From IMG/VR virus record IMGVR_UViG_3300050343_000191, positions 124,001-188,000 of that record: a stretch of DNA of 64,000 nt, one strand, 5' to 3'. A program made the translations under genes and the position numbers. This document shows, in pieces, positions 29,641 to 49,556 of this stretch. Numbering within the stretch: position 1 is the stretch's first letter; each line of letters begins with the position of its first letter. The notes under the pieces were generated by a model that was not told the origin of the DNA, did not search any database, and was given only the letters and a program-made list of their open reading frames with translations.

Positions 29641-29641
29641 A

Positions 29642-30749: not shown

Positions 30750-30800
30750 ACACGCGCACGGCGCGGCGCACGCGGGGGGCGGGGGCACTGCCCGACACCC
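30750..30800. other. Non-coding G/C-run element at the early/structural junction
   Basis: cacgcgcacggcgcggcgcacgcggggggcgggggcactgcccgacaccc is almost pure GC in an AT-rich genome. Confidence 0.7.
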
Positions 30801-30821
30801 ACCCACTGTGTGCCACTTAAC

Positions 30822-31121
30822 TCACTGCCACAACCAACGGGCGATGCGCTCTCTGTTGCGTAGGGGCATCAGGCGGGTGTACTCTACCCAACGCTTGCCC
30901 AGTTCGTGACGCTTGATCAGTCCCTGCTCTGCCATCACTTTGAGTAGCATTGAAAGACCCGTCCGCGCTTCATTAGGCAAACCCAGAGCGGCGTTGATGT
31001 CAGTGGGGCGCATTCCATCCTGAGTCATGCCATCGTCGCCGTCATCCATAGGAAGGACTGAAAGGATCGCCCACTGATACGTAGCACCGAAGGACTGACG
31101 ACTTGTGATTGAGGTGAACAT
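30822..31121 (-). CDS. Winged-helix DNA-binding protein (putative)
   Basis: MRPTDINAALGL...LSMLLKVMAEQGLIKRHELGKRWVEY follows the wHTH helix-helix-wing pattern; dyad promoter upstream. Confidence 0.55.
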   Translation of the reverse strand: MFTSITSRQSFGATYQWAILSVLPMDDGDDGMTQDGMRPTDINAALGLPNEARTGLSMLLKVMAEQGLIKRHELGKRWVEYTRLMPLRNRERIARWLWQ

Positions 31122-31193
31122 GGTTGGTTTGTTTGCTTGTGTTTATTGTACAGGGTCAGAAGGGAGAATCGCTATCTCCCTTGTGCCAGTTAT

Positions 31194-31421
31194 TCAACCG
31201 AACATCGCTTCCGCTAGTTCCTCCCATGTGTGGTACTGGGTAGGGTTGCCGGGTTCGGGGTTTGCCTTTGGAGCATCAGACAACATGCACGCCCAAGCGT
31301 TGACGTGGTAGGTGTAAGGTTGAAACGTATTGTCATCCTCACAGTATGCAAGACCCTGACGGGGGATAAGATCGCCGTGATGGGATGCGTAGTTTAGGTG
31401 ATCCATTGTGTGGGGTTCCAA
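31194..31421 (-). CDS. Hypothetical early protein
   Basis: 75-aa ORF with its own leader and -10. Confidence 0.65.
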   Translation of the reverse strand: MEPHTMDHLNYASHHGDLIPRQGLAYCEDDNTFQPYTYHVNAWACMLSDAPKANPEPGNPTQYHTWEELAEAMFG

Positions 31422-31475
31422 CTGAGTTAATTCTACAGGGTGAAGGGACCGAATCGCGATCCCTTTACAATTGTT

Positions 31476-31703
31476 TTAGAATGCGACCAGTTGATCGATG
31501 TCCCACTGATCCACTTCGGTTGCTGTTGATTGGATCCACTGATTGACGTGCTTCGTTGTGGTGACACTGTAGCGGGTGCTGCTGCGTATCCATCCCTTAC
31601 CAGGCACCAGAGCAGCGACAGGGGTCTTGTATGAGAAGAACACCGACGTACCGTCTGCCAGGTCAACTTGAGTTTTGTTTGCGCCGAGTGATTGAACTTG
31701 CAT
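31476..31703 (-). CDS. Conserved-type phage early protein (start MQVQSLG)
   Basis: VFFSYKTPVAA...YSVTTTKHVNQW; ATG follows the AACAACCAACC leader. Confidence 0.7.
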   Translation of the reverse strand: MQVQSLGANKTQVDLADGTSVFFSYKTPVAALVPGKGWIRSSTRYSVTTTKHVNQWIQSTATEVDQWDIDQLVAF

Positions 31704-31887
31704 GGTTGGTTGTTTCAACTGAGATAACAATAGGGCATCTGGTGCGTTGTGCCTATTTCATGTGCCACCTGTCAAACTGGCACACAATCCAAATTCAACC
31801 CCCCTAGCGTGCTAGGATGAAGGTAGACTCTAAAATTGGTTGAGTTAGTATTAATTAAAGGGGAGAATCATCCCCCCCTAAGTGTTA

Positions 31888-32370
31888 TCAGAAGTTGGTG
31901 CAGAAAATATATCCGTCCTGCTCAATGTAGTCGTGGCGGAGATTATCCCATGTGTCTTCCCAATCAACAGAAACAAAGGAAGGAATATCGAGTGAGTAAC
32001 AATCAGAAACTAACTGTTCTGCAAACTCAGCGCCTGACATTTCGCCCTGATAAGAGTCAGAAATGTCAGAGATACAATCCTCTCCAAAGTATTCAATAAA
32101 AGCACGGATTGCATCAGCAGGATAATCCTCTAATGCTTCATTGATTGCCTCTTGATTATCACTATCCTCTGCCTCAATCGTTTCTTCTTCGATGTCATCA
32201 ACTGTTTCGCCCTTTACCTCTAACAATGCCATGTAAAAATCGGTAAAGTGAACTTTAGTATTTGAACCTTCGACGGTACAATAACCACAAGCGATGGCGA
32301 TCTCTGTAGGTTTCTTGCCTTCCGCTTGCATTGCGGCGACGGTTTCTTTGAGAGCGGTTCCAGTGAGCAT
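31888..32370 (-). CDS. Fusion of a cyanobacterial AbrB N-terminal domain with an ArdA-like acidic domain
   Basis: Residues 1-54 LTG.AL..V...E.A.ACGY...V.FTDFY.ALL..KG match the cyAbrB (Sll0359-type) N-domain. The C-terminal DSYQGE...EFAEQLV...DIPSFVSVDWE...DY...GYIF matches the ArdA C-terminal domain. Confidence 0.65.
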   Translation of the reverse strand: MLTGTALKETVAAMQAEGKKPTEIAIACGYCTVEGSNTKVHFTDFYMALLEVKGETVDDIEEETIEAEDSDNQEAINEALEDYPADAIRAFIEYFGEDCISDISDSYQGEMSGAEFAEQLVSDCYSLDIPSFVSVDWEDTWDNLRHDYIEQDGYIFCTNF

Positions 32371-32457
32371 GGTTCTGTGTGAGAGTGCGGGGTGGTCCCG
32401 CTTGTGTTTATTGTAGACCCTAGGGGGGAGTTTGTGAACCCCCCCAGTGGACGCTTA

Positions 32458-32664
32458 TCAGACCGCCACAGTCTGAAGGGTTTCGTTGCGGATCTGCTGA
32501 TTCATGAACTTACCTTTGGATTCAGCAGTATTGAACCCCAGAGCGAAACGCTGAACGTCTGCCACTGTGTAAGTGTAAGCACGCCCGCCGTTAAATGTAA
32601 CGGTCACGCGGTCGCCGTCAAGAGCGACTGAATCAAGAGCGGATGAGTTGAAAGCGTTGATCAT
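32458..32664 (-). CDS. KTSC-domain protein (start MINAFNSSAL)
   Basis: SSALDSV...VTFNGGRAYTY...AESKGKFMNQQIR. Confidence 0.65.
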   Translation of the reverse strand: MINAFNSSALDSVALDGDRVTVTFNGGRAYTYTVADVQRFALGFNTAESKGKFMNQQIRNETLQTVAV

Positions 32665-32739
32665 GATTTTGTAGAGTTTGTTTTGTGGAGTCTTTAGGGC
32701 GCTGCCGTTCCCGTGTTTCAATTATAAGGGATGAACGGA

Positions 32740-32928
32740 TCAGTCGCGGTCGCTGATGTTCCAGGTTCCGAACTGTCCACTAGGACGGGAGTCGTTCCAC
32801 TTGCTGAACCATTCCTGGCGTGCTGCTGCCCGTGCTTGTGCCTGTTGGCGTTCTTGCTCCAGACACTTCAGACCAATCGCTGCGAGGCGGTCATCTGATG
32901 CGAAGATCCCGTTTCCGTAGTTTTTCAT
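32740..32928 (-). CDS. Hypothetical early protein
   Basis: 62 aa; dyad at 32989, TATAAT at 32954-32959 and leader upstream. Confidence 0.7.
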   Translation of the reverse strand: MKNYGNGIFASDDRLAAIGLKCLEQERQQAQARAAARQEWFSKWNDSRPSGQFGTWNISDRD

Positions 32929-33006
32929 GGCGTTGGTTTGTTTGCTTGAATTAATTATAGGGCATCGAGTGCCCTATGGTTCAGTTGGTGGACACTTCGG
33001 AAAGTG

Positions 33007-33183
33007 TCACAGGGTGTCCTCTCCGTACTCCATGTATGTCCATCCTAACCAGTCCTCAACGAAAGCATAGGATCCCGACTCGCTGTGCATACTGTAGCAT
33101 AAATCTGCTGCTGTGTAAGGATCGCTTACGATTTCCCGCTCACCGAGAGCAGGGCAGGCAACGAGGTAAGATCCAGTCGTCAT
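33007..33183 (-). CDS. 58-aa hypothetical early protein
   Basis: Hand translation MTTGSYLVACPALGEREIVSDPYTAADLCYSMHSESGSYAFVEDWLGWTYMEYGEDTL; AAACAAACCAACC leader. Confidence 0.7.
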   Translation of the reverse strand: MTTGSYLVACPALGEREIVSDPYTAADLCYSMHSESGSYAFVEDWLGWTYMEYGEDTL

Positions 33184-33379
33184 CGGTTGGTTTGTTTGAC
33201 TTGTGCCAATGATGCCCCAGATTTCGACTCAGCGCAAGGGGTAAGGGACAGTTCAGAAAGTGGCACAAGGTAGCAGTTTTATTGGTGTGGGGGTGTTATC
33301 TTATAAGAAATCAGACGAGGCGGGGGGTACCGCTGTTGACGAAAATACATCGCCACTGATCCTGCCATGAAATAATCAT

Positions 33380-33404
33380 AAAAAAACCGCCCCATAAGAG
33401 CGGT
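33380..33404 (-). terminator. Intrinsic terminator
   Basis: Minus strand ACCGCTC-TTATG-GGGCGGT-TTTTTT, downstream of the 33427-33579 gene. Confidence 0.7.
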
Positions 33405-33426
33405 GGACGGTTTTCAAACTGGCACA

Positions 33427-33579
33427 CTACCAGCGGTCGAACTGTTCTTCTGTGCTAACTTGCACCTGTTCATCACCTTCCAGACCTAGAACCTCATTCC
33501 AATCATAAGATTCTAACTCTAGGTCATCATAACACTCTATGTCAAGTGTGACTCGGACAGTTCGCTTAGTGGCATACAT
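33427..33579 (-). CDS. 50-aa acidic hypothetical protein
   Basis: Hand translation MYATKRTVRVTLDIECYDDLELESYDWNEVLGLEGDEQVQVSTEEQFDRW. Confidence 0.65.
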   Translation of the reverse strand: MYATKRTVRVTLDIECYDDLELESYDWNEVLGLEGDEQVQVSTEEQFDRW

Positions 33580-33611
33580 GGCGTGTGTGGTGTGAGTGTG
33601 TGCGTATTATA

Positions 33612-33845
33612 TCATGCGTAATGCTTATATGCAAGCGCATCATAATCTTGTGTGTCGCGTGTGTATTCTTCATCCAGATCTTCATCTAGATGTGTATGTG
33701 CATACGATTGCACACACATCTCATAAGACTCGTCGAGATCGTATTCATATGCTGGTGCATAGGTATAGTCGAGATCGTAATCGTCGTACATAATTCTCGT
33801 CGAGATTGCCATGTTTATTATACCGATAACTCGTCTAGATGTCAA
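33612..33845 (-). CDS. Asp/Tyr-rich hypothetical protein (start uncertain)
   Basis: YDDYDLDYTYAPAYEYDLDE; overlaps the palindrome array; TATAAATA at 33886-33893 upstream. Confidence 0.55.
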   Translation of the reverse strand: MTSRRVIGIINMAISTRIMYDDYDLDYTYAPAYEYDLDESYEMCVQSYAHTHLDEDLDEEYTRDTQDYDALAYKHYA

Positions 33846-33940
33846 CTAGAAGGATCTAGTGCGTCTCGTCGAGATTCATAACATTTATTTATAAGGTTTA
33901 GTCGAGATTGTGTAGTTATCATAACATAAGTCTCGACGAG
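33671..33940. repeat. Array of (T)CTCGTCGAGA(T) / CATCTAGATG palindromes (iteron-like)
   Basis: Copies at 33683, 33729, 33766, 33795, 33830, 33864, 33899 and an inverted copy at 33931; AT-rich late-promoter segment at 33878-33898. Confidence 0.8.
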
Positions 33941-33978
33941 TTATTGTGTCCTTCTGTGAATTTTTTCCGCCCGGTGGG

Positions 33979-34007
33979 TTGACAAGTCGCCCGTCTTATG
34001 ATACGCT
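33979..34007 (+). promoter_or_regulatory. Antisense sigma70-type promoter TTGACA-N17-TACGCT with extended -10 TG
   Basis: Perfect -35, 17-nt spacer and TGnTACGCT; points against the local direction of transcription. Confidence 0.55.
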
Positions 34008-34046
34008 CGCTAAACTATACTTCCATACACGAAGAAACTCTTTCAT

Positions 34047-34229
34047 TTATGGAGCACTAAAAGGATAAACCATCTTACCTGTCTGAGTTGCATTATTAAC
34101 TGATGGACGATTGACAAGTCTTCTTATATCATTCATCTTCTCCTTACCAGTCTTTAAGTTCAAACCACTGGGATTTGAATAGATTTTAAGTGGTGCAATC
34201 TGTTCTACAAAGGTCTTATAAGTCTTCAT
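34047..34229 (-). CDS. 60-aa late protein with a T4 internal-protein-like N-terminus
   Basis: Starts MKTYKTFVEQ; CATAAATA at 34260-34267 upstream. Confidence 0.6.
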   Translation of the reverse strand: MKTYKTFVEQIAPLKIYSNPSGLNLKTGKEKMNDIRRLVNRPSVNNATQTGKMVYPFSAP

Positions 34230-34262
34230 TTTTTAGGGCGCTATCCGTCTCGTAAATGATAT

Positions 34263-35924
34263 TTATGAATCACTGAAACGATTGTAAGTATCCATATCTT
34301 CTAAAGTCTTACCATACTTATTCTTTCTTGTATGAACATACTCTAAGTCTTTCCAATACTGTGGATGACATAGTAAGAGTGTATGAATATATTTGTGTCT
34401 TTCATTCTTTGTATATTGACAATTAGGTTTAGGTTTAATACCTGTCTCTATCGTAATATACTTTTCATCAACAAAGTACACCCAACCCTTATGAATTAAA
34501 CCATTATGATGCCAGATAACATAATCATCTATTTTAGGAGTATAGTGCATATTCAAGGGGATTAAGATTGAGTTGCATTGCAGAGTAAGGAGTCGTATCG
34601 TTAATTGATACTTCCTTTCCTATTTTATTTGAGTTGATGGGGGCATAGTAAGTGTACGAACTGCCTCTCTTTGCTGTTGTCTTTGTTTTACAGAATCCCC
34701 AGATACAATAACACTCATCACCGCTATTGTAATTAAACTCAGACTCACATACAGTCCAAATTGAAAGTACATTAGACGTTTTACGAATAACTTCGTATCT
34801 GTATCCTTTTGGTGGTTCATGAATAAAATCAGGTGGTAAGTTACACGCCAGTGGTTCCATCGGGGATTGCTCTAAGTGCGTTAGGATTGTGTCCATCTTC
34901 AATCAATTGATTCAATGCTTTTGTTGCTTCTTCTTTATTCAAATGCTGATTCTTATCATCAGTCATTTCCCAACCAGTAGTGCAAAGTTCTTCGATTCGA
35001 TAGGTTTTGTTATCAGTCATTTTTGTTTAAGTTGTAAAGGCATCGATGATAGAAGATTCATACTCATCAACTAAAGAGAACTTTTGTGCTTTTAGAATGT
35101 TTGGCATAATACGATCCTCATATCCAGGATGATTAAGTCCATCTTCCTCAGCACATAATTCAAATGCTTCAGTATCAGATTCTGCAATTAAGTTTACCAC
35201 TCCACCATACTCTGATTGTGGAAACGGCACCCAGTAATCAACAATGTAAAGTGACTTCATTTGTGCTTTGTGGATTTAACCATTTTAATCGCTTTTAATC
35301 TGTTTGTCAACTACAGAAACTCCTGCATATAATAATCAACTGTCACCTCTAACTCTGCTGCTTTACGCTCAAAGAACTTGTTTGTATAATCTTCTGCTTC
35401 TTTTCGCTTCTTATATGAATCAATCTCAGTTTCAGCGTGATTCATAAAATCATCAAATGCTTTGATAAACATATCAATATCATCATTGTTCATTTCAGAA
35501 AGAGGGTTCACAGATTGGGTCATTTTGTTCTCCGATTGTTGATTGGTCCATTCCATCGTAAATTTCCTTGAGTCGATTGTAGAGTGTTGGTGCTGATCCA
35601 TAATACTGTGCAATTTGCCATTCCTCTGCTACATCCAATACTTGCAATGCAGCAAGAATAATTCCTAACTCTTGCACGTTGATTGGTATATTATGCTCAG
35701 TTTTCATCTTTGTCTCCTTGACTACAATCCTAATTATATTACATCAATTGTCGTAAATTGTCTACTGCTTGTATCATCGCAATACGACTATATCCTGCCG
35801 CATAAGGATAACTCCTTGCATCACCATCATTTGTACCATCACACTCAGTACAAACATTGATCGCAGTCTCTAACCTTTCAATGATACTTTCGATTTCAGA
35901 CTTGGTAGACTTGAGATCACACAC
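34263..35924 (-). other. Run of small hypothetical early CDSs
   Basis: Abutting ORFs 34263-34556, 34534-34860, 34841-35020 (59 aa, hand-found), 35027-35260, 35311-35523, 35495-35707 and 35739-35924; no family recognised. Confidence 0.65.
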
Positions 35925-36075
35925 TGTAAAGATCCTCCTGTTGTTGGCGAAGAAAAGAAATAGTCTGATTGATGTTCTCTACCTCTTGCAATAGTTTTAA
36001 CTTACGCTTTGACATAGCAATAATACTTTTGTCAAGTTCTCCAATGTGCATCTCACGTTGCATTGGTAGTTTCAT
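35917..36075 (-). CDS. 52-aa coiled-coil hypothetical protein (start MKLPMQRE)
   Basis: ATG at 36075 overlaps a TAA (TAATG) of the frame-corrected upstream gene. Confidence 0.6.
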   Translation of the reverse strand: MKLPMQREMHIGELDKSIIAMSKRKLKLLQEVENINQTISFLRQQQEDLYSV

Positions 36076-36358
36076 TAGACTAACTCCTGTTGATACTGCA
36101 TGAACTTGCTCTTCTGTAACCTCATCCACACAGTCTTGAATCACAGTGTAGATGTAATCTATCTGCCCAACATCATCAAAGATACGTGCAATCAAGTGCA
36201 GGATCTTCTACCTCAATATCATAATCAACCTCACCGTTTTCATCCTTCATATGAATATCTTCCTTGGTGTAGATCCACGCAGCACATTCTGCATCTTCAC
36301 CCTGTTCTTTGATCATACTTGATACTCGGTCTTGAAGTTGCTTGAGAGTGTAGTTCAT
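36075..36358 (-). pseudogene. Hypothetical gene apparently broken by two 1-bp insertions (or sequencing errors)
   Basis: Removing one base near 36195 and one near 36106 gives a 93-aa ORF MNYTLKQL...EDPALIARIFDDVG...EEQFMQYQQELV* that ends in a TAATG overlap. Confidence 0.5.
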
Positions 36359-36749
36359 CAGATGAGTGCCTCTAGTGTGATACCTTTGTCTGCAAATGCG
36401 TCAGAAACAATGCCACAGAGTGCATTTTCTTCAAAGTCACTCAGTTCCCAAAGTTCAGCGGCAATGCTGATCATTTCCTGAATGTTCTCACTTAGAGTGA
36501 GCATTTCGGTCAGTTGATCTTGATTCATCATTGGTCGCACTCCATTAGGTTAGGACACCAAGCAGTGTCATAGGTTTCAGATGATTTAGCAACACCATTG
36601 TAGGTGTCCAACCATTCTCCATACTCTTCATAGAGAGCACGGATGTTACCAACATCTTCGAGCAAGTCACCCTCAACGTAGGTCTCACACAATGCGATAA
36701 CGTGTTCGCATTGATCCTCAATCATTGTGATCCGTTCTTGGTCAGTCAT
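36358..36749 (-). other. Two small hypothetical early CDSs
   Basis: 36358-36540 (60 aa) and 36528-36749 (start MTDQERI); dyad at 36812 with TACAAT at 36775-36780. Confidence 0.65.
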
Positions 36750-36823
36750 TGAGATCCTTTGGTTGAACAATGTAATTGTAGCAGTGATTGCCGCGATCGC
36801 CGCGGCCAAGTGTACCAGTTAGT

Positions 36824-37066
36824 CTACTGGCACACTTCATAAACCGAACGCCGCGCAGTTTTCCTCAGAATCTTAGAATCCTTGGCACGGCGCACTGCCC
36901 AGCGTACAGAGGTTTTCTCTGCCTTGGTTTCAGCACCCAGTGTGGTGTAAAGTTCACAGAGAGTGATATACTCTCTGCCCTGATTCACCAGGGCACGGAT
37001 CAGAACCTGAGTGGCAACATCAAATGCAGAGGCGTATTCGCCAGATTCAGAGAGAGTGAAGTTCAT
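36824..37066 (-). CDS. Winged-helix-like early protein (start MNFTLSES)
   Basis: YITLCELYTTLG...VRWAVRRAKDSKILRKTARRSVYEV; basic recognition helix plus wing. Confidence 0.5.
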   Translation of the reverse strand: MNFTLSESGEYASAFDVATQVLIRALVNQGREYITLCELYTTLGAETKAEKTSVRWAVRRAKDSKILRKTARRSVYEVCQ

Positions 37067-37131
37067 TGCCTTTGTTTGAACTGAAGTCAGTATAGAGCAG
37101 ATCAAGTGATCGCCGCGGCCAAGGTGGACAC

Positions 37132-38034
37132 TTACTCAACTGGCACAGAGAACCTACCATATTTGAAGTTATATCGGGAGAATAACTCTCTTTTCACCAG
37201 TTTATATGAACCAAAGTCATTTGTTAGTACATAACCCTCAGCATCAATGAATCGTTTGCCTAAGTATGCAGCAGGACCACCAGATGTGGCACAAATTGAT
37301 AATTTATCCTCCTTAATCGTCTTTACAAGTTTCCATAAACGCATTAAGTTCAAATCACACTCGGCAACGTCCGCCAATGCCTCTGGATCAAGCACAGCAC
37401 CAGTTTTAATGAAAGTATTCAAAACCTTCTCAATCTTTCGTGCGTGTGTCTTAGTTTTGGCGTATTCTACCGTAGTTGACATTTGACGTGCAAATCGCAC
37501 AATATCATCAAATTTATCATCTTCTTGCCATCCTTCAGGTTGAACAAACAACACATCTTTAGTGCTCTTAGGTGTAAGAATCATACAAGATCCTATAGCA
37601 TCACGAAGATCACTCTCAGCAACATAGATTGTATGTGGAGCAACAATGATACTCTGAATTACAAGATCAGGGAAAACATAAGTGATTGCATTAGGTGTGT
37701 AAGTGTCATCACCACCAAAACCAATAAAGTCACCCTGAAAGATACAATCAGTTCGTGGCAGACAATCAAAACAAGCGTGGAGAATGTCTGCTACTTCACC
37801 CTCATAATGTAGATCAATCTCATCGTGAGAGTGTGCAATTCGCAGTTTCTTTTTGTTGAATACTGCTTTAGTACCTACGAAAAATGTTTTTGTAGCAGGA
37901 TCAGTACCCCATACAATTGCAGGAGCACCATCAATCTTCACAGAAACATTTGCAGGTTGAGTGAACCAATCAAGTACACTCAGATCACCCATTAGAATAG
38001 AATCTTCAGGATGTTGCAGATGAGTATTTTTCAT
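37132..38034 (-). CDS. DUF6267-like protein with a KxDG nucleotidyltransferase-like motif
   Basis: MKNTHLQHPEDS; VSVKIDGAPAIVWG; IFQGDFIG; AEGYVL; YKLVKRE.FS..NF. Confidence 0.6.
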   Translation of the reverse strand: MKNTHLQHPEDSILMGDLSVLDWFTQPANVSVKIDGAPAIVWGTDPATKTFFVGTKAVFNKKKLRIAHSHDEIDLHYEGEVADILHACFDCLPRTDCIFQGDFIGFGGDDTYTPNAITYVFPDLVIQSIIVAPHTIYVAESDLRDAIGSCMILTPKSTKDVLFVQPEGWQEDDKFDDIVRFARQMSTTVEYAKTKTHARKIEKVLNTFIKTGAVLDPEALADVAECDLNLMRLWKLVKTIKEDKLSICATSGGPAAYLGKRFIDAEGYVLTNDFGSYKLVKRELFSRYNFKYGRFSVPVE

Positions 38035-38715: not shown

Positions 38716-38738
38716 TACCTTTGTTTGAACTGAAGTAA

Positions 38739-39302
38739 TCATACAGGCAATACTGCCTCACTCCGTGTCTTCTGTGCCAGTTTGCTCTTTGGCACATTCA
38801 ACTCCTCCATTATAATTTGTTTTGGTAGAAAGTCCCAGCAATAGTATGAACTACTAAACGTGATCTTATCATTCGATCTACCATCAGGACTATGAAACTT
38901 CATTCGCTTGTCAAACATCAACAATTGCAGATCCTTGTCCTTGAACAACTGCTTTGGTGCAGAATCATTCAACCAAGTGTTAGTCATAATCAACGCAAAT
39001 GGTTTGTTGAATGACAATGCCCGCTCAAAGAACTTACGCTTGTTTGTAAATGGAGGATTTGATACAATTACATCAAAGTGAACAGGTTCATAGGCAAAGA
39101 AGTCTTTACCCTCATCAATATGAGAGTATTCAACACTATGAGTCTGTGAAATTTGCTTAACAAATTCACTCTCTGCCTTATCAAATGGACACCATACTTT
39201 TGCATCCGTTGGAATATACTTCAGGATGGGAGTAACAGCGTAATCTGGCGTATAGCACTCATCATTGTTACCTGATGAGTACATAAGTTCTTTAGAGTCC
39301 AT
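38739..39302 (-). CDS. Amino (N6-adenine type) DNA methyltransferase
   Basis: DECYTP (motif X), VWCPFD (I), DFF and VSNPPF (IV); likely start MDSKELMYS. Confidence 0.8.
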   Translation of the reverse strand: MDSKELMYSSGNNDECYTPDYAVTPILKYIPTDAKVWCPFDKAESEFVKQISQTHSVEYSHIDEGKDFFAYEPVHFDVIVSNPPFTNKRKFFERALSFNKPFALIMTNTWLNDSAPKQLFKDKDLQLLMFDKRMKFHSPDGRSNDKITFSSSYYCWDFLPKQIIMEELNVPKSKLAQKTRSEAVLPV

Positions 39303-39304
39303 AA

Positions 39305-39972: not shown

Positions 39973-39996
39973 TGGTCTCTTGCGATTACTCCGTAA

Positions 39997-40494
39997 TCAT
40001 ACAGCAGCACAGAGGCGATTGGAGAACCTCTGCGCCACTTTCCCAACTGGCACACCAAAAGTATCACTCATATACCAATCATATAACCTTAATTCTTCTT
40101 CTCTTGCCTCAATTTCGTGTGGTTGATCTTCATAAGACCAATTTTCCACTGGTTCTGTAGAATAACACAATTTTCCCCTCCGAAAATGCAAAGAACCCTC
40201 TACCCATTGCTTCAGATGCGTCAATTCGTGTAAAAGTGTCTTAATATAAACTTCCTTACTCATATCAGTCTGAAGTTCGATCATAAAATGACGAGGGCGA
40301 TAGTTATGACCCACAACATCACAATAACCAACAACTTGTTCACTTTTCAATCCACGATGAATAATATCAACGGAGATTTTGTGGCGTGGGAAAAAGTTAT
40401 TCAGAAACCAAGAGGTAACATCCTCGCAGATGATCTTAGAATAACCGTATCCAGAATGGTAGATGCTAGACATGTGCTCCAGTGTAGAAACCAA
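39997..40494 (-). CDS. HExxH zinc metallopeptidase (SprT/zincin-like)
   Basis: TLLHELTHLKQW plus QPHEIEA (third ligand E). Confidence 0.7.
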   Translation of the reverse strand: MVSTLEHMSSIYHSGYGYSKIICEDVTSWFLNNFFPRHKISVDIIHRGLKSEQVVGYCDVVGHNYRPRHFMIELQTDMSKEVYIKTLLHELTHLKQWVEGSLHFRRGKLCYSTEPVENWSYEDQPHEIEAREEELRLYDWYMSDTFGVPVGKVAQRFSNRLCAAV

Positions 40495-40531
40495 ATGAAC
40501 GATGATACAAATAAAAGTTTTTCTTTAGCAG

Positions 40532-41421: not shown

Positions 41422-41489
41422 TGCTTGGTTGCGTATGAACGTATTGTAAGGGCATATAGGGACGTTTTAGCGTCCCTTGTGCCAGTTAT

Positions 41490-41900
41490 TCAACTGTCCG
41501 TGACAGATCCAGCAGGGATTTCAGTCAGTTTTGCGGAGATATCGTGCAAATCGTAGCAGATCCACTCATCAGCACGAGTGAAGATGTAAGCATACTCTTC
41601 ACCATTGTCCAGAAATTCAGTAATGTCATCATCAATTCGTGGTTCATTCTCTCTGATAGATTCTCCACGCGAAGTGTAGTATTGGGGACCAGTTTCAGGC
41701 AGAGTTTCATTCTTCCAACCCACATTAGTATGCAGAGAGGAAATGTTACCACCATCGATCAATTCGTGGACTTTCTCAACAGTAGTATAATGCTCACGAA
41801 GAACACGACCATTGAAGGAAGGATAACCATCCCAGTGACAGTAGACAGACATAATGCTGTCACCTTTGAGTTGGATACCAATGCGAGAGCGAGTGCCCAT
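41490..41900 (-). CDS. Conserved-type phage hypothetical protein (start MGTRSRIG)
   Basis: MGTRSRIGI...SVYCHWDGYP...EEYAYIF; dyad at 42039. Confidence 0.75.
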   Translation of the reverse strand: MGTRSRIGIQLKGDSIMSVYCHWDGYPSFNGRVLREHYTTVEKVHELIDGGNISSLHTNVGWKNETLPETGPQYYTSRGESIRENEPRIDDDITEFLDNGEEYAYIFTRADEWICYDLHDISAKLTEIPAGSVTDS

Positions 41901-42062
41901 TTTAAGAGAGAAAATGAATGGTGGGTAGTGACCAGCGTACCCGATTGGTTTAGTCACTTTAAGTGAGGTCAGTGTTGTGTTAGGTCTCCCCTCCACTCAT
42001 CTAATATCGCATAAAAAAAGCACCCCGTCAAGGATGCTGTGCCACTTATGGGAGTGTCACAT

Positions 42063-42296: not shown

Positions 42297-42334
42297 ATTT
42301 GTAAAGCGATGTTACTATTTATTACATTATTGCT

Positions 42335-43333: not shown

Positions 43334-43517
43334 AGAACTTATCTAAAACTTTATCCTGATGACGATTCTCTGGATTAGCAATCTTACCTTCTGTAGTAGG
43401 ATCCCACTCATCAGGTGAGTGTGTCTCATTACAGTGCAAATCTACCTTGTACTCATTCCACTTATCATTAGGATCATAAAGTGGATCGGATGGATCTTTT
43501 TGGCGTGGTTGTGACAT
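43287..43517 (-). CDS. Protein with a CP12-like C-terminal motif
   Basis: Ends DKVLDKFCDDHPGSPMCKVFDD (C-x8-C-x-V-F/Y-D-D). Confidence 0.6.
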   Translation of the reverse strand: MSQPRQKDPSDPLYDPNDKWNEYKVDLHCNETHSPDEWDPTTEGKIANPENRHQDKVLDKFCDDHPGSPMCKVFDD

Positions 43518-43520
43518 AGT

Positions 43521-46220
43521 TTAACAGTCCTTATCTTTTTTGAATTGTTTACGGCACCCCTTAAGTACCTTGAGTTCTTCTTTGATAGTTTTGTAGGCAT
43601 CTTCGGCAGATAGTTTTCTTCCCATCTCCAGAGCAATTGTTAATTCTACCCTAGTTCCAAAATGTTTAAGTGCCTCCTCAAAACAATTTAAGTCTTCATA
43701 CATTACTTATAAGTTCAGTTTTCAATTTATGTATTTCATCAAAAGCAAGAATCATATTTTCCTCAAGTTTATTGAGTTTTTCGTCGTGAGACTTCAACCA
43801 ATCAAAATGTAAATCATTATCAAAATTAGGATCATCATAAAGGGTATTGGCATCAACACCATACCTTTCTGCTGCCCAAGAGGGGGGAGTAGATGATTTC
43901 CAAGGATAAAGTATATGCTCTAACTCAGCAATCATCCCCCACAACCAAATATGCAATGTACGAATCATAACTTTCCACTAACAACACCAGAATTTACCAC
44001 ACGAGTATAATTTTGAAGTGTACCATCTTGAAGACATTTGAGATGCCATCTTGACATTTCGATGATACCATTCTCAGTTGCACCAGTAAGAAAGTGTGCT
44101 CCAAGTGGTTCTTTTAGAATAGATGTAAAAAGACCGAATATACTTTTTTTAATATAGAAAGCATCATCAATCCACACAACATCCTCTGGGATATTCTTTT
44201 CAATAGTATTGTTTGGACCCAGTGTTGATGCTAGTGTAGGTTTTTTGACTTCAGTCTCCGAGTTCATAACATCCCCACTTTCCAGACTCTTCATCAAAGA
44301 TTGCTACTGTGTTTGGATATACATCCTCTGGTTTATCAACAAGAGGAACACCATCCTTATTAGTTTCAATCTGATCACGAATAAAACCGAAAGGTCCAAT
44401 TTTACCTTCAGATTCTAATCGTTTCTTCATAACAACAGAACCAAGAGACTCCATAATTTTCAGGATGTCTTCTGCTTTAGCACCTTCACCTAGTTGTTTT
44501 GCAACGTAAAAGTATTTGTCGAAGAATTCTCCGCTATACTTTTCGTAGTCTTCAACCGTTATTGATTTGTCTTTCATGAGGTCTTTTCAGTTTAAGTTCA
44601 GCAAGTTTGTGTGCAGTGTCTAGAGAGGATATACTCAATTTTTTTACTGCGGCAATAAGTTCGGGAGTTTCTTCCCATTCCCATATATCACCTTTAGGTG
44701 ATGTAAATTGTCTGGTTGTCATAATGCCTCCCTAGCATTTTTAAGTGTGGTAAGCAAGTGCATATTGCCTTTCAAGTATCCTAACACAATGATACCCAAT
44801 ATGGCAAGTAGAGTAATACCTAACATTATTATATTAGGTAAGGGTGTCGATAAAGTAACTTCCTTTTCGGAGTTTGTATCTTTGGATGTGTTTTGTTCTG
44901 TGTTCTTCACATTCAAAGTGGCAGATTCTGTTTTCTTTTCCATCAGTGTATTCTAATCTAAAAGGAAAACTTGAAAAAGGATGTCTATCTTTAATAGGAA
45001 GTTCTTTCCTTTTTACCTTTGCTTTGGGTTTTGTTTTAGGTTTTGTTTTAGGTTTAGGAGTTGTAGTGACTTTCTTTTTTGCAGTCATTTGAAACCTTTG
45101 CTCTGCTGCTTTCTATCCAAGACTTCAATGTGTGAAATATATTTTCCACGTCCACGAGTCCACCAAATTTCTTGTGCTAGCATATAGTCATCAACTACAA
45201 TACTTTCACCAGTTTTTGAAACAACTTTGTATTGATGACGACCATAATCTCCATCAGATGTCTCGGTGAAGTATTGAGGGTCTTCAGGTTGGATCAATTC
45301 CATCGGTTGCTTTTCGGTGATTGTATTCTATCACATATTTTTCACAAACGGTGGTGTCATCTGTTACCACATAATGTTTTAAGATGTAGTGTGGATCCAG
45401 TTTTTGCCCTATAGAATGGAGTTGCCACAAAATTTCATTCTTCTCTTTCCCATCCATCTTATGCTTTTTTCTTAGACCTTTTTGATGTCATCATAAAAAT
45501 GGCAAGAACAGATAAAGTAACTGCCGAAAAAGAAATTAATCCAAAAACAGGATCATAAGGATTAGTGCTTACACTTTCCCAAGTTCCTGGCAAAAAATAA
45601 ACTGATGGAGTTGAAAGAAAAATCATTCTGTTATCTCATTTTAACTATCTATTAAATTTTAGACTAATCATTTAGAGATTGTGCTAATTTGTTTACACGA
45701 TTATACTCTTCATATGCTTCATTTGCGCGGGAATGAAGAATATCATAGATGTCTTCACGGATAGTTTCAATATCCACATAATCATCAAAATACTTATCTA
45801 ACGCTTCTTTAAGGTACCTCTTCCGGTGCCATTCAATCGAATAGGGTTTGTAATCCATAATGTGAGGTTCTTATGAACGTATTATACCACTATCTATTGT
45901 TAGGGTCAATACCCAATTCCTTAAGATATTCTGTCCACCAGTCTGGATCTCTCTTACACTTCCAATCAGGAACTGGTAAGTTATGAAGCGAATACCACTC
46001 GTTAATCGCTTCATCGATAGTCTGTGCGATCTGTAAATTCTTCTTCCTCTTTATCAAGGTCTGCATACGGATTGTCCACGTATGGTCCTCGTTTTCGTAA
46101 AGGTTCTTTTCCGACATAAGAGTTTTCTGTGTTGATTGCAGATACCCATACGGCAAGTTTCATTACTATAAAAATTAAAACCAGTGGTGTAAAGCAACCG
46201 ATTAAAATTATTGGATTCAT
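43521..46220 (-). other. Run of small hypothetical CDSs
   Basis: 43521-43703, 43696-43968, 43965-44297, 44251-44577, 44834-45088 (PKPKTKPKTKPK low-complexity N-terminus), 45085-45303, 45664-45858 and 46011-46220, plus several ORFs under 60 aa. Confidence 0.6.
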
Positions 46221-46453
46221 AGTAGATTATTCTCTTGAAAATAGTGTAATGTATCTTTGAGTCCACCAATATGCTTATATCCAATAGAAACTTGTGGATA
46301 CTCCGCACCTTCACCAAACTCAGAAACAAATGCTCTCTGAGTAAAATGGTTATTTAATTTATATTCCTGTATTTGACTATTAAGTTTTTCTAAAAGCATT
46401 CTAGCACGTTCACATTCTTGATTTCCGTTCGTGTATAACACTATTGAGTTCAT
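46217..46453 (-). CDS. Glutaredoxin-like protein with a degenerate active site
   Basis: IVLYT..NQECERARMLL...YPQVSIGYKHIGGLKD; thioredoxin-fold cis-Pro and GG; only the second Cys of CxxC is present. Confidence 0.7.
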   Translation of the reverse strand: MNSIVLYTNGNQECERARMLLEKLNSQIQEYKLNNHFTQRAFVSEFGEGAEYPQVSIGYKHIGGLKDTLHYFQENNLL

Positions 46454-46470
46454 TATTTCTCCTAAGTTGG

Positions 46471-47987
46471 TTACAATGTTCTTTCTAATCTACTTGTTGC
46501 TTGATCGGGAAAGTCTCTAGGACGACTATCTGTTGCGTTATCGGTTCTAGGTGAACCTTCATTTGCCTTCATTGTATGCTGATAGTTAGGTCGTGGATAT
46601 CTAATGCAAAATGGATCAGGCATCCAATATGTTACTTGCCATTCTTGATCAGGACATAACTCAAGATGTTTTTCTACAGTGTGAGAGAAACTACCCAATT
46701 GTATGTATCCATCATGACTAATACATCTACCATTACCAACATCAACCAAGAACATCATCTTACTACTCATAGTATTTTTTGTTCTGGGTTGAGGTTCTTT
46801 ACAAATTGCACGGGATCTTTTTCTGATTTATGAACCCAATGATACCGAATACATTCAAACTCAGGATCCCAAGTCTGAACGCAGATATAATCAGTCACGT
46901 TGCCTCCAATCATCAGGTTTATCCTGCTGGAACCAATCTTTGATGTCATCAGCACTATTGAACCCCGTTTTGTGATTGGATGGATCGGGGTCTCCTAAAC
47001 CCATCCTATTCAGAAAATCGTCGGTACTGCCTTCTTCAATTTCTTGAGAAGATTGTCGTCGTGCTTTTTGTAACCAATCACGAGCAGTAGTGTGACTTTT
47101 TGCCAACTTCTCTGCCCAGATCATATCGTCTAATTTTACCTCTTCGCCATTTGCAATACATTTACAAATAAACTCCAGTCTCAGACGGTATTGAGTAGAT
47201 AACATAAAGTTACGCTTCGTTACTTTTATTTATTTTCTTCCATCAATCTCTTCGACAAACTAAGAGAGCGACGGTATATCATATATTTTACCACAGGATT
47301 TCTAGGATTGTTAGTCAACCACCAGATTTGGCGTCTTATGTAAGTATTTGCTAACTTAAATCCATAATAAAAAATGGCAGCAGCACCTTCATCTGTAAGG
47401 ATAAAGTATGCTACTACCACAAATAGTATGAATAATAGAGTCACTTAGACTCCTCATATCTTCTTTTTTCAAGATATTCAATCATCTCTTGCCTCCACTC
47501 CATCAGTTCATAAAAACACTCTTGATTGTGAGCACAACCGCGAAGACGACTATCAGGTTTGATTACACTTTCAAGCATTAAACCAAGTGCATCACGTCTT
47601 TTTTGTTCTTTGGCGCAACTCATTGTTTTCTTTTTCGTTTAGTGGTTTTTAATTGGTTTTTGATGAAGTCTACTGATTGTTTGTAGGTGCTCAGGATTTT
47701 AATTTGTTTACAGTTATGTATGATGACAAATTTTTTCCCAATAGGAATTGCTGCCCACATACCATCGTTAGTACAATAACCCAGAGGATTGCCAGGTTTA
47801 GGATTAAGAATCCCAGGACGTTCGATATGTGGTTTAAGAAATCCCATTAGAAAGTAGCAGTGACACCCATAACTGTTGCATTAGGATTGCGTGCAAGTGC
47901 TACCTCGCGTGCTTCCTTGTAATCGCGTGCCTCAACCATTTCGTTGAAGACTTTACCAGCGACGTAGAGTTGAACTTTGCAGCGCAT
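46471..47987 (-). other. Run of small hypothetical CDSs
   Basis: 46471-46770, 46891-47205, 47226-47444, 47441-47623, 47620-47847 and 47847-47987 (46 aa). Confidence 0.65.
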
Positions 47988-48021
47988 AATCAGTTTGTTT
48001 CGACGTTCTTAGTATAGCACA

Positions 48022-48513
48022 TCAGATCGATCTGATGAAGGACAGATCAAAATCTTCAGATTCTCTAAAGTAATCACGTACTTGCTCACGCTCCTCTAAG
48101 CAGTTATAACCAGTGAGAAAGAAGTCAGAAATTTCAGGGTCTGCAATCGCATTTACACAAGCACCGTTGTCTTTGATGTTCTTTAATTTTGACTTAGGAA
48201 TACAACATCCCTTCCCCTTCTTTACATCAGTTATGATAAAATAATCGGCAAGTTTGTCCACATAATTTCCTGCCTGACGACGATTCTTAAGAATCAATCC
48301 TCTCACCGCCATCTGCGATTTGTTCTTAAATTGAGTTACTTTTGATTCATAAGTTGTTCCATTGGGACCAATCAAATCAATGCCAGGAAGATTTACTCTA
48401 GTGAGAAGACCATTACTATACTCAGCAAGTGCTTTCTCTACAAGTTCTCCTGCTTTGGGGTACCTTAGATTGTTGTCAGTGTAATCGTGAATCGTTTCTA
48501 AAAGTTTAGTCAT
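48022..48513 (-). CDS. PD-(D/E)XK nuclease-like protein
   Basis: GELVEKAL...PGIDLIGPNGTTYESKV (E...D...ExK); ADYFIITD; start overlaps the helicase stop. Confidence 0.55.
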   Translation of the reverse strand: MTKLLETIHDYTDNNLRYPKAGELVEKALAEYSNGLLTRVNLPGIDLIGPNGTTYESKVTQFKNKSQMAVRGLILKNRRQAGNYVDKLADYFIITDVKKGKGCCIPKSKLKNIKDNGACVNAIADPEISDFFLTGYNCLEEREQVRDYFRESEDFDLSFIRSI

Positions 48514-49473
48514 CGACGAATCTCACTGATAGCGGGTTGACCTTGATTAAACACAACATCAACAACTGCCTGAACTTTCTTGGCAGTGCTGATACCAACT
48601 CTATCATAAGTTGGAATACAAACTAAACCAAACGTCTTCTCAGTGCTACCCAGACGGATCACACGACCGATAGACTGACTGATACCAATGTAATCCATAT
48701 TACGCATAAAGATGACTGCCTCAAGTCCACTGACGTTGATACCCTCAGACAGAATAGAGTGGTGAAGAACAACAAATCTTATTGATTGCATTGTCATCGA
48801 TGGTTTCCAACAAATTCTGTGAATCTGTGAGTCTAAAGTCCCCTTGTGGCAATTGTTTAACAACCACTTTTGGAGGAAGAATATACCCTTCATTGACAAG
48901 CAAAGGAGCAGGAACATTACATAAAACTTGACCATATACTGACCCATCATTCATCCCTGGTTTGAAAATAGTAACACTATGCTTAGGAGTAGCAGTGAAG
49001 AAGTAGCAGCGATCAGAATCAGAAGCAAAGTGTTCCGTAGCAGGGAAAAAGTTTCTTTGAACCGAATTATGCGCTTCGTCAAAGTAAATGGTATCGATTT
49101 CAATTCCTGCCTCCTGAATACGGTGCAACGAATGATATGTAGTAAAAATCAGTTGATTTCGATACGCTTGTTTACACCACCGCTCAATATATGCAGGTTT
49201 TGTGCTACTGAAGTGCTCAGTTTCTCCACTGTGAACGTGAAACACGGCAGCATTGTCAATAACTTCCAAAAACTCTTTACAGAGTTGTGCTGCCAAAAGA
49301 ATACGAGGAGCAACTACAACAATCCTTGTAGGACCATCAGAATCGAATCGTACTTTAGCGTCTTCAATCATACAAATAGTCTTGCCACCACCAGTAGGGA
49401 TGATAACCTGACCTTTAGTATGTTTCTGCATCGCTTCCAAAGCATTCTGCTGATGGGGGCGAAGGGTGATCAC
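48510..49473 (-). pseudogene. SF2 (DEAH, ResIII/UvsW-like) helicase split by an internal deletion and frameshift
   Basis: Motifs Q (LRPHQ), I (PTGGGKT), II (DEAH) and III (TATP) are in one frame; V (LSEGINV) and VI (QSIGRVIR) are in another. The frames join at AAGATTTGTTG (48770-48780) with the motif IV region missing. Confidence 0.75.
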
Positions 49474-49556
49474 GGGTTTCCTGTTTGGTATGGAATTATT
49501 ATAGCAGAAGATCACCTACTAAGATACCTTGCAGACAGTCTAAGAACTGGAACAAG

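What the first reader, a model, noticed from the sequence alone, without database searches (positions are those of the whole stretch)
30810..49553. Early promoters use a 22-bp dyad at fixed spacing instead of a -35 box
About 16 copies of an 8-6-8 inverted repeat occur. Measured gaps to the -10 hexamer are 32 (31183), 29 (31762), 32 (32448), 31 (32758), 29 (32989), 31 (36812), 30 (37125), 30 (38774), 30 (40032), 30 (41479) and 28 (49532). This places the dyad centre near -53, the geometry of an activator site, and there is no TTGACA. The activator must be a host protein or one injected from the virion. I recall a palindromic early motif being reported for cyanophage Syn9 (this should be verified), but I do not know of an identified binding factor.
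Basis: partly seen in the sequence, partly recalled or inferred. Interest (0 to 1): 0.7.

Follow-up and report, generated by a model that had tools for sequence, protein, structure and literature searches.

The report
Cyanophage early-promoter upstream dyad element
A 22–24 bp near-palindrome sits exactly 30–31 bases upstream of the −10 box of early-gene promoters in this T4-like cyanophage and in hundreds of related phages. It is most likely a docking site for an unidentified protein that recruits the host RNA polymerase, and an element of this kind was probably already reported for cyanophage Syn9.

Summary
Sixteen copies of TGTGCCAsTT-N4-AAsTGGCACA lie on the gene (minus) strand at 30.8–49.6 kb. 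Ten of 16 copies have a near-consensus −10 at 28–32 nt (chance p = 2e-11). −35 hexamers are mostly absent.

The element is not peculiar to this genome. At least 120 IMG/VR contigs, S-PM2, P-SSM2, Syn9, P-TIM40, S-SRM01 and S-SKS1 carry it with the same spacing (mode 30–31 nt). In 21% of sites it serves divergent promoters on both sides.

It is absent from T7-like, TIM5-like and sipho-cyanophages and from T4. It shows no enrichment in 251 host-family genomes.

The arms do not covary, and one arm position is actively anti-palindromic. The dyad is therefore read as double-stranded DNA by a protein, not as a hairpin.

The best reading is an upstream activator-type site of a −35-poor, σ70-type early promoter. 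The factor is unidentified. The distribution leans towards a phage-borne factor over a host one.

From my memory, unverified here, Doron et al. 2016 described a "novel regulatory element" for early genes of Syn9 and P-TIM40. So this is a new instance of a probably known element whose reader protein is still an open question.

The parts
30810..30831 (-). Dyad copy 1 (GTGGCAGTGAGTTAAGTGGCAC). It has no -10 at 28-32 nt and is followed by a very GC-rich tract of about 60 nt.
31145..31204 (-). Dyad 31183-31204, spacer hairpin, then -10 TACAAT at 31145-31150 (gap 32). Drives the 99-aa MarR-like wHTH gene at 30822-31121.
31727..31783 (-). Dyad 31762-31783 and -10 TATTGT at 31727-31732 (gap 29). Drives the 75-aa gene at 31476-31703.
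32410..32469 (-). Degenerate dyad 32448-32469, G/C hairpin, then -10 TACAAT at 32410-32415 (gap 32; -35 TTCACA). Drives the 160-aa gene at 31888-32370.
32721..32779 (-). Degenerate dyad 32758-32779 and -10 TATAAT at 32721-32726 (gap 31).
32954..33010 (-). Dyad 32989-33010 (GTGACA / TGTCCA half-site variants), hairpin, then -10 TATAAT at 32954-32959 (gap 29). Drives the 62-aa gene at 32740-32928.
33209..33266 (-). Dyad 33245-33266 and a weak -10 CATCAT at 33209-33214 (gap 30). Drives the 58-aa gene at 33007-33183.
33386..33425 (-). Dyad 33404-33425 immediately followed by a terminator-like hairpin plus T7 (33386-33404): a composite dyad-terminator.
33516..33575 (-). Weak dyad-like copy 33554-33575 overlapping the start codon of ORF 33427-33579. 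It is followed by TTGACA at offset 8 and TAGAGT. Uncertain member.
36775..36833 (-). Dyad 36812-36833 (best stem in the window) and -10 TACAAT at 36775-36780 (gap 31). Drives the 73-aa gene at 36528-36749. The spacer contains GGCGATCGC.
37089..37146 (-). Dyad 37125-37146 and -10 TATACT at 37089-37094 (gap 30). Drives the 80-aa gene at 36824-37066.
38738..38795 (-). Dyad 38774-38795 and -10 TATGAT at 38738-38743 (gap 30). Drives genes 38572-38715 and downstream, including DUF6267 at 37132-38034.
39996..40053 (-). Dyad 40032-40053 and -10 TATGAT at 39996-40001 (gap 30). Drives the 55-aa gene at 39805-39972.
41443..41500 (-). Dyad 41479-41500, hairpin, then -10 TACAAT at 41443-41448 (gap 30). Drives the DUF7717 gene at 41068-41421.
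42003..42060 (-). Dyad 42039-42060, then a terminator hairpin plus T7 (42019-42038) whose loop holds TTGACG, then a weak -10 GATATT at 42003-42008. A composite terminator/promoter.
49498..49553 (-). Degenerate dyad 49532-49553 and -10 TATAAT at 49498-49503 (gap 28). Drives the UvsW-like helicase ORF at 48745-49515.
33817..33845 (-). Contrast class: a canonical TTGACA-17-TATAAT promoter with no dyad upstream. Similar ones lie at 35282-35310, 43143-43171 and 45881-45909.

Best explanation
The dyad is the upstream module of the early-gene promoter type used by T4-like cyanophages (Kyanoviridae and the S-SKS1 lineage). This promoter has a sigma-70-type -10 box, usually no usable -35, and a 22-24 bp pseudo-palindrome about 30-31 nt upstream of the -10, roughly -43 to -64. 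I infer that a sequence-specific protein with two similar DNA-reading heads binds this double-stranded site. From there it would contact the host RNA polymerase (alpha C-terminal domain and/or sigma region 4) and so supply the recruitment that a -35 box normally gives. Because the site is nearly symmetric it can serve promoters on either side. Shown here: the motif, its spacing, its wide conservation, its restriction to certain phage lineages, the lack of base-pair covariation, and the -35-poor context. Inferred: protein binding, activation, and the polymerase contact. The reader protein is not identified. On the distribution data I lean towards a phage-borne factor, either delivered with the DNA or made first, rather than a host regulator.
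For: (1) The motif is far above chance and clusters in the early small-gene region.
(2) In 138 unique perfect-pattern sites from at least 120 IMG/VR contigs, a -10-like hexamer starts 29-32 nt away in 123 sites, and on both sides in 29. In 647 relaxed sites the offsets are 30 (300 cases) and 31 (245 cases). The spacer sequence is free while its length is held. The length holds even when the spacer is an intrinsic terminator.
(3) When a -35 is present it sits exactly 8 nt after the dyad with a 16-17 bp spacer. It reaches at least 5 of 6 matches in 14% of sites against 2% in the control, and two thirds of sites have at most 3 of 6. In this window, canonical -35/-10 promoters carry no dyad and dyad promoters carry no -35.
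(4) The element is not a hairpin. Positions 7/16 are 'paired' in only 11-31% of sites (Fisher 2e-22). Positions 4/19 show no compensatory change. This was checked in 259 sites chosen without reference to the distal arm.
(5) The dyad occurs in S-PM2, P-SSM2, S-SRM01, S-SKS1, Syn9 and P-TIM40, with reversed-pattern controls of 0-1. It is absent from P-SSP7, Syn5, S-TIM5, P-SS2 and T4.
(6) There is no excess in 251 host-family genomes, and the recurrent hits there are coding. All prokaryote genomes together give 63 hits in 596 Gb, about chance and partly mis-binned phage.
(7) The first genes behind dyad promoters are typical early or takeover genes: ArdA-like, DUF7717, Kyano_Gp96, DUF6267 and tiny acidic proteins.
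Against: No transcription start or expression data could be obtained for this phage; the RNA-library contigs were too sparse and mixed. No binding protein was identified. A site centred near -54 is not one of the classical Escherichia coli CRP class I positions (my own knowledge). Cyanobacterial promoters often lack a -35 anyway, so a missing -35 does not by itself prove dependence on an activator. The anti-palindromic position is unexpected for a simple homodimer. Absence of near-consensus sites in host genomes does not exclude a host factor whose own sites are much more degenerate. If early genes fire before any phage protein is made, a phage-encoded reader would have to travel in the virion, which is untested.
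Confidence: 0.55

Rival explanations
1. The dyad is an operator for a phage-encoded repressor that shuts early promoters off at the early-to-middle switch. This would replace the AsiA-type shut-off that these phages lack. The promoters themselves would fire with host polymerase alone.
For: The distribution is phage-lineage-specific and there is no host regulon. The -10 boxes are near consensus, and a minority of sites have good -35 boxes. A MarR-like wHTH gene (30822-31121) sits directly behind one dyad promoter. T4-like cyanophages lack motA/asiA (PMC5780444).
Against: The site ends 8 nt upstream of the -35 position and does not overlap the core promoter. A one-base-precise spacing and use on both sides are more typical of activators. 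The wHTH gene occurs in only 1 of 5 dyad-bearing isolates. Most dyad promoters have no -35, so they would be weak without help.
Confidence: 0.15
2. The reader is a conserved host protein of marine and freshwater picocyanobacteria, and the phage has evolved super-consensus sites for it. This is a sub-case of activation, and it is the first reader's first option.
For: Early genes must fire before phage proteins are made. The same element works in phages of Prochlorococcus, marine Synechococcus and freshwater Synechococcus. It also occurs in S-SKS1, which lies outside Kyanoviridae. Generalist cyanophages express early genes even in resistant strains (PMC6708340).
Against: With at most 2 mismatches the motif is rarer in 251 Cyanobiaceae genomes than its reversed control. 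The only recurrent host hits are a LysR coding sequence and one unrelated-looking intergenic palindrome. T7-like, TIM5-like and sipho-cyanophages, which infect the same hosts and also depend on host polymerase early, lack it. S-SKS1 shares the whole early gene module with this phage, so it is not independent evidence.
Confidence: 0.2
3. The dyad is the stem-loop of a PeSL-type mobile promoter-terminator cassette. It would act as an RNA or DNA hairpin (terminator, 3'-end protection or recombination point), and the fixed spacing would reflect only common descent of the cassettes.
For: The copies lie between small genes of a hyperplastic region. Flanks of some copies are homologous (D9, D14, D16). 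Blocks are reshuffled relative to S-SKS1. Conserved genes have different neighbours in related phages. PeSLs are described as a stem-loop just upstream of an early promoter (PMC4122927).
Against: The arms do not covary, and perfect palindromes are depleted. Several copies do not fold at all. The orientation relative to transcription is random. The spacer sequence is not conserved while its length is. When there is a terminator hairpin it is a second, separate structure lying between the dyad and the -10. Rfam has no match.
Confidence: 0.07

Closest known systems
The 'novel regulatory element' of early genes of T4-like cyanophages Syn9 and P-TIM40 (Doron et al. 2016, ISME J 10:1437). Its content is recalled from memory; only the reference was seen.
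   Same: Both concern T4-like cyanophages, the early small-gene region, an element that is not host-like, and conservation across cyanomyoviruses and metagenomes. Syn9 and P-TIM40 both carry this dyad in their early regions. Host-like -35/-10 promoters form a second class in this window.
   Different: I could not read the paper, so I could not confirm that the published logo is this dyad. The anti-palindromic position, the dyad-terminator composites, the use on both sides and the occurrence in S-SKS1 may or may not be described there.
PeSL promoter-early stem-loop cassettes of T4-type phages (Arbiol 2010, PMC2839356; Comeau 2014, PMC4122927)
   Same: Both are a repeated composite regulatory cassette between small ORFs of hyperplastic regions, made of an upstream dyad-like element, an early promoter, a leader and an ATG. 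Both are associated with module shuffling.
   Different: PeSLs have good -35/-10 boxes and a stem-loop defined by pairing. Here the -35 is mostly missing, and the dyad is conserved in sequence across genera without covariation. The terminator-like hairpin is a separate element inside the spacer.
T4 middle promoters (MotA box plus -10, sigma appropriation by MotA/AsiA)
   Same: Both have a sigma-70 -10 kept, the -35 replaced by a phage-specific sequence at fixed distance, and both lie in a T4-like phage.
   Different: The MotA box is a 9-bp asymmetric element centred at -30. Here the element is a 22-bp pseudo-dyad centred near -54. No MotA C-terminal-domain (MotCF) homologue was found in G000, Syn9, S-PM2 or S-SKS1, while the T4 control was found.
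Class I activator sites (CRP-type) at bacterial promoters
   Same: Both are dyad sites upstream of the -35 at helically constrained distance, and both can serve divergent promoters.
   Different: The CRP consensus is TGTGA-N6-TCACA (16 bp). Here the TGTG and CACA ends are 24 bp apart. The position is near -54, not -61.5 or -41.5 (my own knowledge). No host regulon was found.

Membership tests
Kyanoviridae-type early promoter element | Conserved motif upstream of early-region genes across T4-like cyanophages | tested here: met
   Present in S-PM2, P-SSM2, S-SRM01, Syn9, P-TIM40 and S-SKS1, and in at least 120 IMG/VR contigs. Reversed-pattern controls give 0-1.
Kyanoviridae-type early promoter element | Transcription starts just downstream, and expression is early in infection | not testable with these tools
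   The RNA-library contigs are sparse and mixed, and no starts could be read. Early timing is inferred from gene content only.
Kyanoviridae-type early promoter element | Identity with the published Syn9 / P-TIM40 early motif | not testable with these tools
   Doron 2016, Weigele 2007, Mann 2005 and Dreher 2011 are not held.
PeSL cassette | Stem-loop defined by base pairing immediately upstream of the promoter | tested here: not met
   The dyad arms do not covary, and palindromic combinations are depleted. A separate spacer hairpin exists in about half of the window copies.
PeSL cassette | Sigma-70 -35 and -10 boxes with a 17-bp spacer | tested here: not met
   The -10 is present. The -35 has at most 3 of 6 matches in two thirds of 647 sites and in most window copies.
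PeSL cassette | Located in hyperplastic regions and at rearrangement points | tested here: inconclusive
   The copies lie in the early small-ORF region. Blocks are reshuffled relative to S-SKS1, but not every breakpoint has a dyad.
T4 middle (MotA-dependent) promoter | MotA box at -30, and motA/asiA genes present | tested here: not met
   The element has a different sequence and position. Pfam MotCF is absent from G000, Syn9, S-PM2 and S-SKS1, while the T4 control is found at 7e-71.
Intrinsic terminator / RNA hairpin | Stable stem with compensatory variation, followed by a T-run | tested here: not met
   Five of 16 window dyads fold at -0.5 kcal/mol or weaker. Pairing at positions 4/19 is 41% and at 7/16 is 29%. 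T-runs follow a different hairpin.
Host transcription-factor regulon site | Similar sites upstream of host genes | tested here: not met
   In 251 Cyanobiaceae genomes 31 have a hit, fewer than for the reversed control, and the recurrent hit is a LysR coding sequence. Sensitivity is limited to at most 2 mismatches.
Known RNA family (Rfam) | Match at gathering score | tested here: not met
   No matches in 29000-51000.

The most novel reading that the evidence does not exclude
T4-like cyanophages, which lack MotA and AsiA, may use their own phage-borne DNA-binding factor. It would be packaged in the virion or be the first product made. It would read this 22-bp pseudo-dyad and stand in for -35 recognition, making it a functional analogue of sigma appropriation built from unrelated parts. 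The conserved early protein family DUF7717 (window 41068-41421) is one untested candidate. It is present in 5 of 5 dyad-bearing isolates and 0 of 5 isolates without the dyad, and is itself expressed from a dyad promoter. Its only hint of a DNA-binding fold is a noise-level structural match to the T4 MotA C-terminal domain (Z 4.4).
Probability: 0.2. Interest if true: 0.75.

Novelty: new member of a known kind. Interest (0 to 1): 0.4.

Why it matters
T4-like cyanophages kill a large share of the ocean's Prochlorococcus and Synechococcus, yet how they switch on their first genes is not understood at the protein level. This element is among the most conserved non-coding sequences of these phages. 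It marks early promoters precisely enough to annotate them in metagenomes: the dyad followed by a −10 at 30–31 nt. It also gives a defined bait for finding the unknown factor. Whether that factor comes from the host, the virion or an early gene decides how host range and early takeover are controlled. For this window alone, the finding is a further instance of an element that was probably already reported.

Tried and rejected
- **Hairpin or terminator reading of the dyad.** Rejected on the covariation counts and the folding energies.
- **Sigma-54 reading (TGGCAC-N5-TTGC).** The spacing does not fit, and cyanobacteria lack rpoN (my own knowledge).
- **CRP or NtcA site.** The half-site spacing is wrong.
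- **Iterated PWM scan of the genome.** It drifted onto Gly-codon repeats, so only high scores were used.
- **Host regulon.** I scanned all prokaryote genomes and 251 host-family genomes. There was no excess. The recurrent hits are a LysR coding sequence and a Prochlorococcus palindrome next to a DUF3136 gene.
- **Transcription starts from public RNA runs.** Four RNA-library runs hold fragments only. Contig ends are not informative, and the high depth comes from related phages.
- **MarR-like wHTH (30822-31121) as binder.** It is present in only 1 of 5 dyad-bearing isolates.
- **84-aa basic protein (44834-45088) as binder.** It is present in 3 of 5.
- **DUF7717 as binder.**
  - Its distribution fits.
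  - The AF2 model is confident, but Foldseek against PDB found nothing.
  - The VIA-align best Z was 5.2, with the MotA C-terminal domain at Z 4.4, inside the noise range.
  - hhalign against the MotA C-terminal domain gave probability 0.3%.
- **Complex prediction of DUF7717 ×2 with dyad DNA.** The job was not folded and gave no verdict, so it is not evidence either way.
- **PHROGs and Pfam on conserved early proteins.** All came back as unknown function.
- **Literature.** Ten searches and several papers found no text describing this dyad. Sullivan 2010 searched only for BPROM, late, Pho and NtcA promoters.

Full report
**What the window is.** The window is bases 124001-188000 of a 231,085-bp IMG/VR virus record rated complete. 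blastn finds only Synechococcus and Prochlorococcus phages. Homologues of T4 baseplate genes gp6 and gp25 lie at 26.9-28.9 kb. Upstream of them on the minus strand is a long run of small genes at 29-50 kb. This is the layout of the early region of T4-like cyanophages such as Syn9. All genes there are on the minus strand, so the promoters must be read on that strand.

- The repeat consensus is TGTGCCAsTT-N4-AAsTGGCACA, with a common variant half-site GTGGACAsTT / GTGACAsTT.
- With at most 4 mismatches there are 8 copies, against 0.12 expected in shuffles. Including degenerate copies there are 16.
- Genome-wide, the strong copies are confined to window 30.8-42.1 kb, with a few outliers.
- Ten of 16 copies have a hexamer within one mismatch of TATAAT at 28-32 nt (chance 3.6% each; p = 2e-11).
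- The −35 position has 4-6 mismatches to TTGACA in most copies.
- A generic −35/−10 scan finds no more sites than shuffles do: 47 against 53 ± 8.
- Four canonical TTGACA-17-TATAAT promoters in front of genes (33845, 35310, 43171, 45909) have no dyad. The window therefore holds two promoter classes.

**The element is not peculiar to this genome.**
- Among 138 unique sites, a −10-like hexamer starts 29-32 nt from the dyad in 123, with the mode at 30 and then 31. In 29 sites this holds on both sides, meaning divergent promoters share one dyad.
- Relaxing the dyad to at most 3 mismatches gives 647 promoters, with offsets of 30 (300 cases) and 31 (245 cases).
- When a TTGACN box is present it sits exactly 8 nt after the dyad, leaving a 16-17 bp spacer. 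A −35 with at least 5 of 6 matches occurs in 14% of sites against 2% at control spacings. Two thirds have at most 3 of 6. There is no trade-off with dyad quality.
- 'Instead of a −35' is therefore mostly right, but not universal.

**Which phages carry it.**

| Phage | Copies | Where |
|---|---|---|
| S-PM2 | 7 | mainly the first 20 kb |
| P-SSM2 | 14 | 44.6-68.8 kb |
| S-SRM01 | 14 | 32-89 kb, one outlier at 190.6 kb |
| S-SKS1 | 4 by the same pattern search; at least 9 dyad plus −10 promoters with a looser search | 143-166 kb |
| P-TIM40 | 6 clustered | 50.3-55.0 kb |
| Syn9 | at least 7 degenerate | upstream of gp63, gp68, gp73, gp75, gp78, gp79 and gp89/90 |

- Reversed-pattern controls give 0-1.
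- P-SSP7, Syn5, S-TIM5, P-SS2 and T4 have none.
- S-SKS1 is classified outside Kyanoviridae. However, it shares almost the whole early gene set of window 29.3-46.4 kb, partly reshuffled, so it is not independent evidence.

**Hosts.**
- All 185,579 prokaryote species genomes together give 63 exact hits, which I estimate to be about the chance level. Several hits are obviously mis-binned phage contigs, and many others are ordinary terminators.
- In 251 genomes of the host family, hits with at most 2 mismatches are rarer than for the reversed control. The recurrent hit encodes the peptide ASQTTGT of a LysR regulator.
- I found no host regulon. The limit of this test is that sites with more than 2 mismatches were not examined.

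**Hairpin or protein site.**
- If the dyad acted as an RNA or DNA hairpin, its arms should covary. They do not.
- At positions 7/16 (the 's' bases), the combinations that would pair make up only 15 of 138 perfect-pattern sites. In relaxed sites they make up 186 of 609 (Fisher 2e-22).
- In 259 sites chosen only by the promoter-proximal arm plus a −10, pairing is 29% at positions 7/16 and 41% at 4/19. The A variant of the distal arm is no commoner when its partner is T (p = 0.19).
- The G..G and C..C forms are equally frequent relative to promoter direction.
- Several window copies have essentially no predicted stem, and Rfam has no match.
- Each arm is thus conserved as sequence, which points to recognition of double-stranded DNA by a protein.
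- The depletion of perfect palindromes is itself unexplained.

**A second structure.** In about half of the window copies the spacer between the dyad and the −10 forms its own G/C-rich hairpin. The mean z-score is −1.75, against −0.57 in the metagenomic set. At 33404 and 42039, at genome position 97998, and at S-SKS1 161421 and 152970, this hairpin is a full intrinsic terminator with a T-run. The 30-31 nt spacing is still kept in most of them. This is the PeSL idea of a composite terminator-promoter (PMC4122927), but there the stem-loop is the element itself. Here the dyad is an extra, sequence-conserved module upstream of it.

**What the promoters drive.** The first genes behind 647 dyad promoters fall into families typical of early or takeover functions. 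These are a weak ArdA-like antirestriction family, DUF7717, Kyano_Gp96, DUF7249, DUF6267, a HAD/PNKP-like phosphatase and many tiny acidic proteins. In the window they include a MarR-like wHTH protein, DUF7717 and a UvsW-like helicase.

**Who reads it.**
- No annotation points to a binder.
- The wHTH gene occurs in only 1 of 5 dyad-bearing isolates, and an 84-aa basic protein in 3 of 5.
- DUF7717 occurs in 5 of 5 dyad-bearing isolates and 0 of 5 isolates without the dyad. Many early genes would show the same pattern.
- The confident DUF7717 model (pLDDT 93.8) has no significant structural neighbour. The T4 MotA C-terminal domain appears at Z 4.4, within the tool's stated noise range. Profile comparison with MotA is negative, and no MotCF homologue exists in these phages.
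- The complex prediction was not run by the tool.
- The factor therefore remains unknown.
- Public RNA libraries holding this phage gave only fragments, and no start sites could be read.

**Mechanism I commit to.** The dyad is an upstream protein-binding module of a σ70-type, −35-poor early promoter.
- Supporting an activator contacting the polymerase rather than a repressor occluding it: the one-base-precise distance to the −10, its position immediately upstream of where σ region 4 would sit, its use on both sides, and the complementary distribution of dyads and −35 boxes in this window.
- Favouring a phage-borne reader: restriction to one phage gene pool and the lack of host sites.
- Favouring a host or virion-delivered reader: the need to act at the very start of infection.
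- These steps are inferred, not shown.

**Comparison with what is known.** From memory, the abstract of Doron et al. 2016 states three things. A novel regulatory element controls early-gene transcription in Syn9. Host-like promoters drive middle genes. These elements are abundant and conserved among T4-like cyanophages, with similar results for P-TIM40. That matches what I see: two promoter classes, and the dyad present in Syn9 and P-TIM40. The paper could not be opened, so the identity is not verified. Papers I could read do not describe the dyad. I therefore file this as a new instance of a probably known element, with an unidentified reader protein. A few details may be new: the anti-palindromic position, the half-site asymmetry, the dyad-terminator composites, the use on both sides, the presence in S-SKS1, and the absence from other cyanophage lineages and from hosts.

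Noticed in passing
window 33386-33425 and 42003-42060; also genome position 97998 and S-SKS1 161421, 152970: Composite dyad, intrinsic terminator (hairpin plus T-run) and -10. The terminator occupies the -35 region, and the usual spacing is kept at 42039 and at the three sites outside the window. At 33404 the nearest -10-like hexamers lie closer, at 23-26 nt.
   Followed up: partly
window 33817-33845, 35282-35310, 43143-43171, 45881-45909: Canonical TTGACA-17-TATAAT promoters in front of genes, without any dyad. This is a second promoter class in the same region, possibly the 'host-like' middle class.
   Followed up: partly
window 30822-31121 (minus): A 99-aa basic protein with a weak MarR-type winged-helix match. 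It is the first gene of a dyad promoter and lies in the 46-47% GC segment. Its only homologue among five isolates is in S-SRM01.
   Followed up: partly
window 30000-34000: GC content is 46-47% against about 35% for the rest of the phage, with nine dyad cassettes packed into 2.8 kb. This suggests recently acquired or reshuffled cassettes.
   Followed up: no
window 29300-46400 versus L222 (S-SKS1 143.6-165.9 kb): More than 30 early proteins are shared with S-SKS1 at 37-90% identity. The order is largely the same, but several blocks are reshuffled.
   Followed up: partly
window 30740-30808 (minus strand, downstream of copy 30810): A very GC-rich tract of about 60 nt follows a dyad that has no -10. 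Its function is unknown.
   Followed up: no
window 48022-49515: The UvsW-like helicase ORF (ResIII/DEAD) is about half the length of Syn9 gp75 and is followed by a separate 163-aa ORF. The gene may be split or interrupted.
   Followed up: no
window 61986-62222: tRNA-Leu(TAA), tRNA-Met(CAT) and tRNA-Ile(TAT) cluster on the minus strand, about 85-96% identical to tRNA clusters of other cyanophages.
   Followed up: no
window 36106-36358 and 40920-41061: Contigs from RNA libraries pile up on two conserved small genes and diverge exactly at the gene ends. The same genes therefore sit next to different neighbours in related phages.
   Followed up: partly
L189/L190 (Cyanobium sp. CH-040 chromosome, G001:C1:114042 and 128295): Two dyad matches lie 14 kb apart in a 47-54% GC stretch of a host chromosome. 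The one at 114042 has a phage-type flank and a -10-like hexamer at 30 nt. The stretch may be a phage-derived island.
   Followed up: no
L206-L210 (six Prochlorococcus-size genomes): A conserved intergenic palindrome GGGCCACTTAGCAAAGTGGCAA lies between a RidA-like gene and a DUF3136 gene. It resembles the dyad core, but the relation is unproven.
   Followed up: partly
window leaders, e.g. 31122-31144, 31704-31726, 32929-32953: CA-rich 5' leaders without a Shine-Dalgarno sequence (CAAACAAACCAACC-ATG) recur behind the dyad promoters.
   Followed up: no
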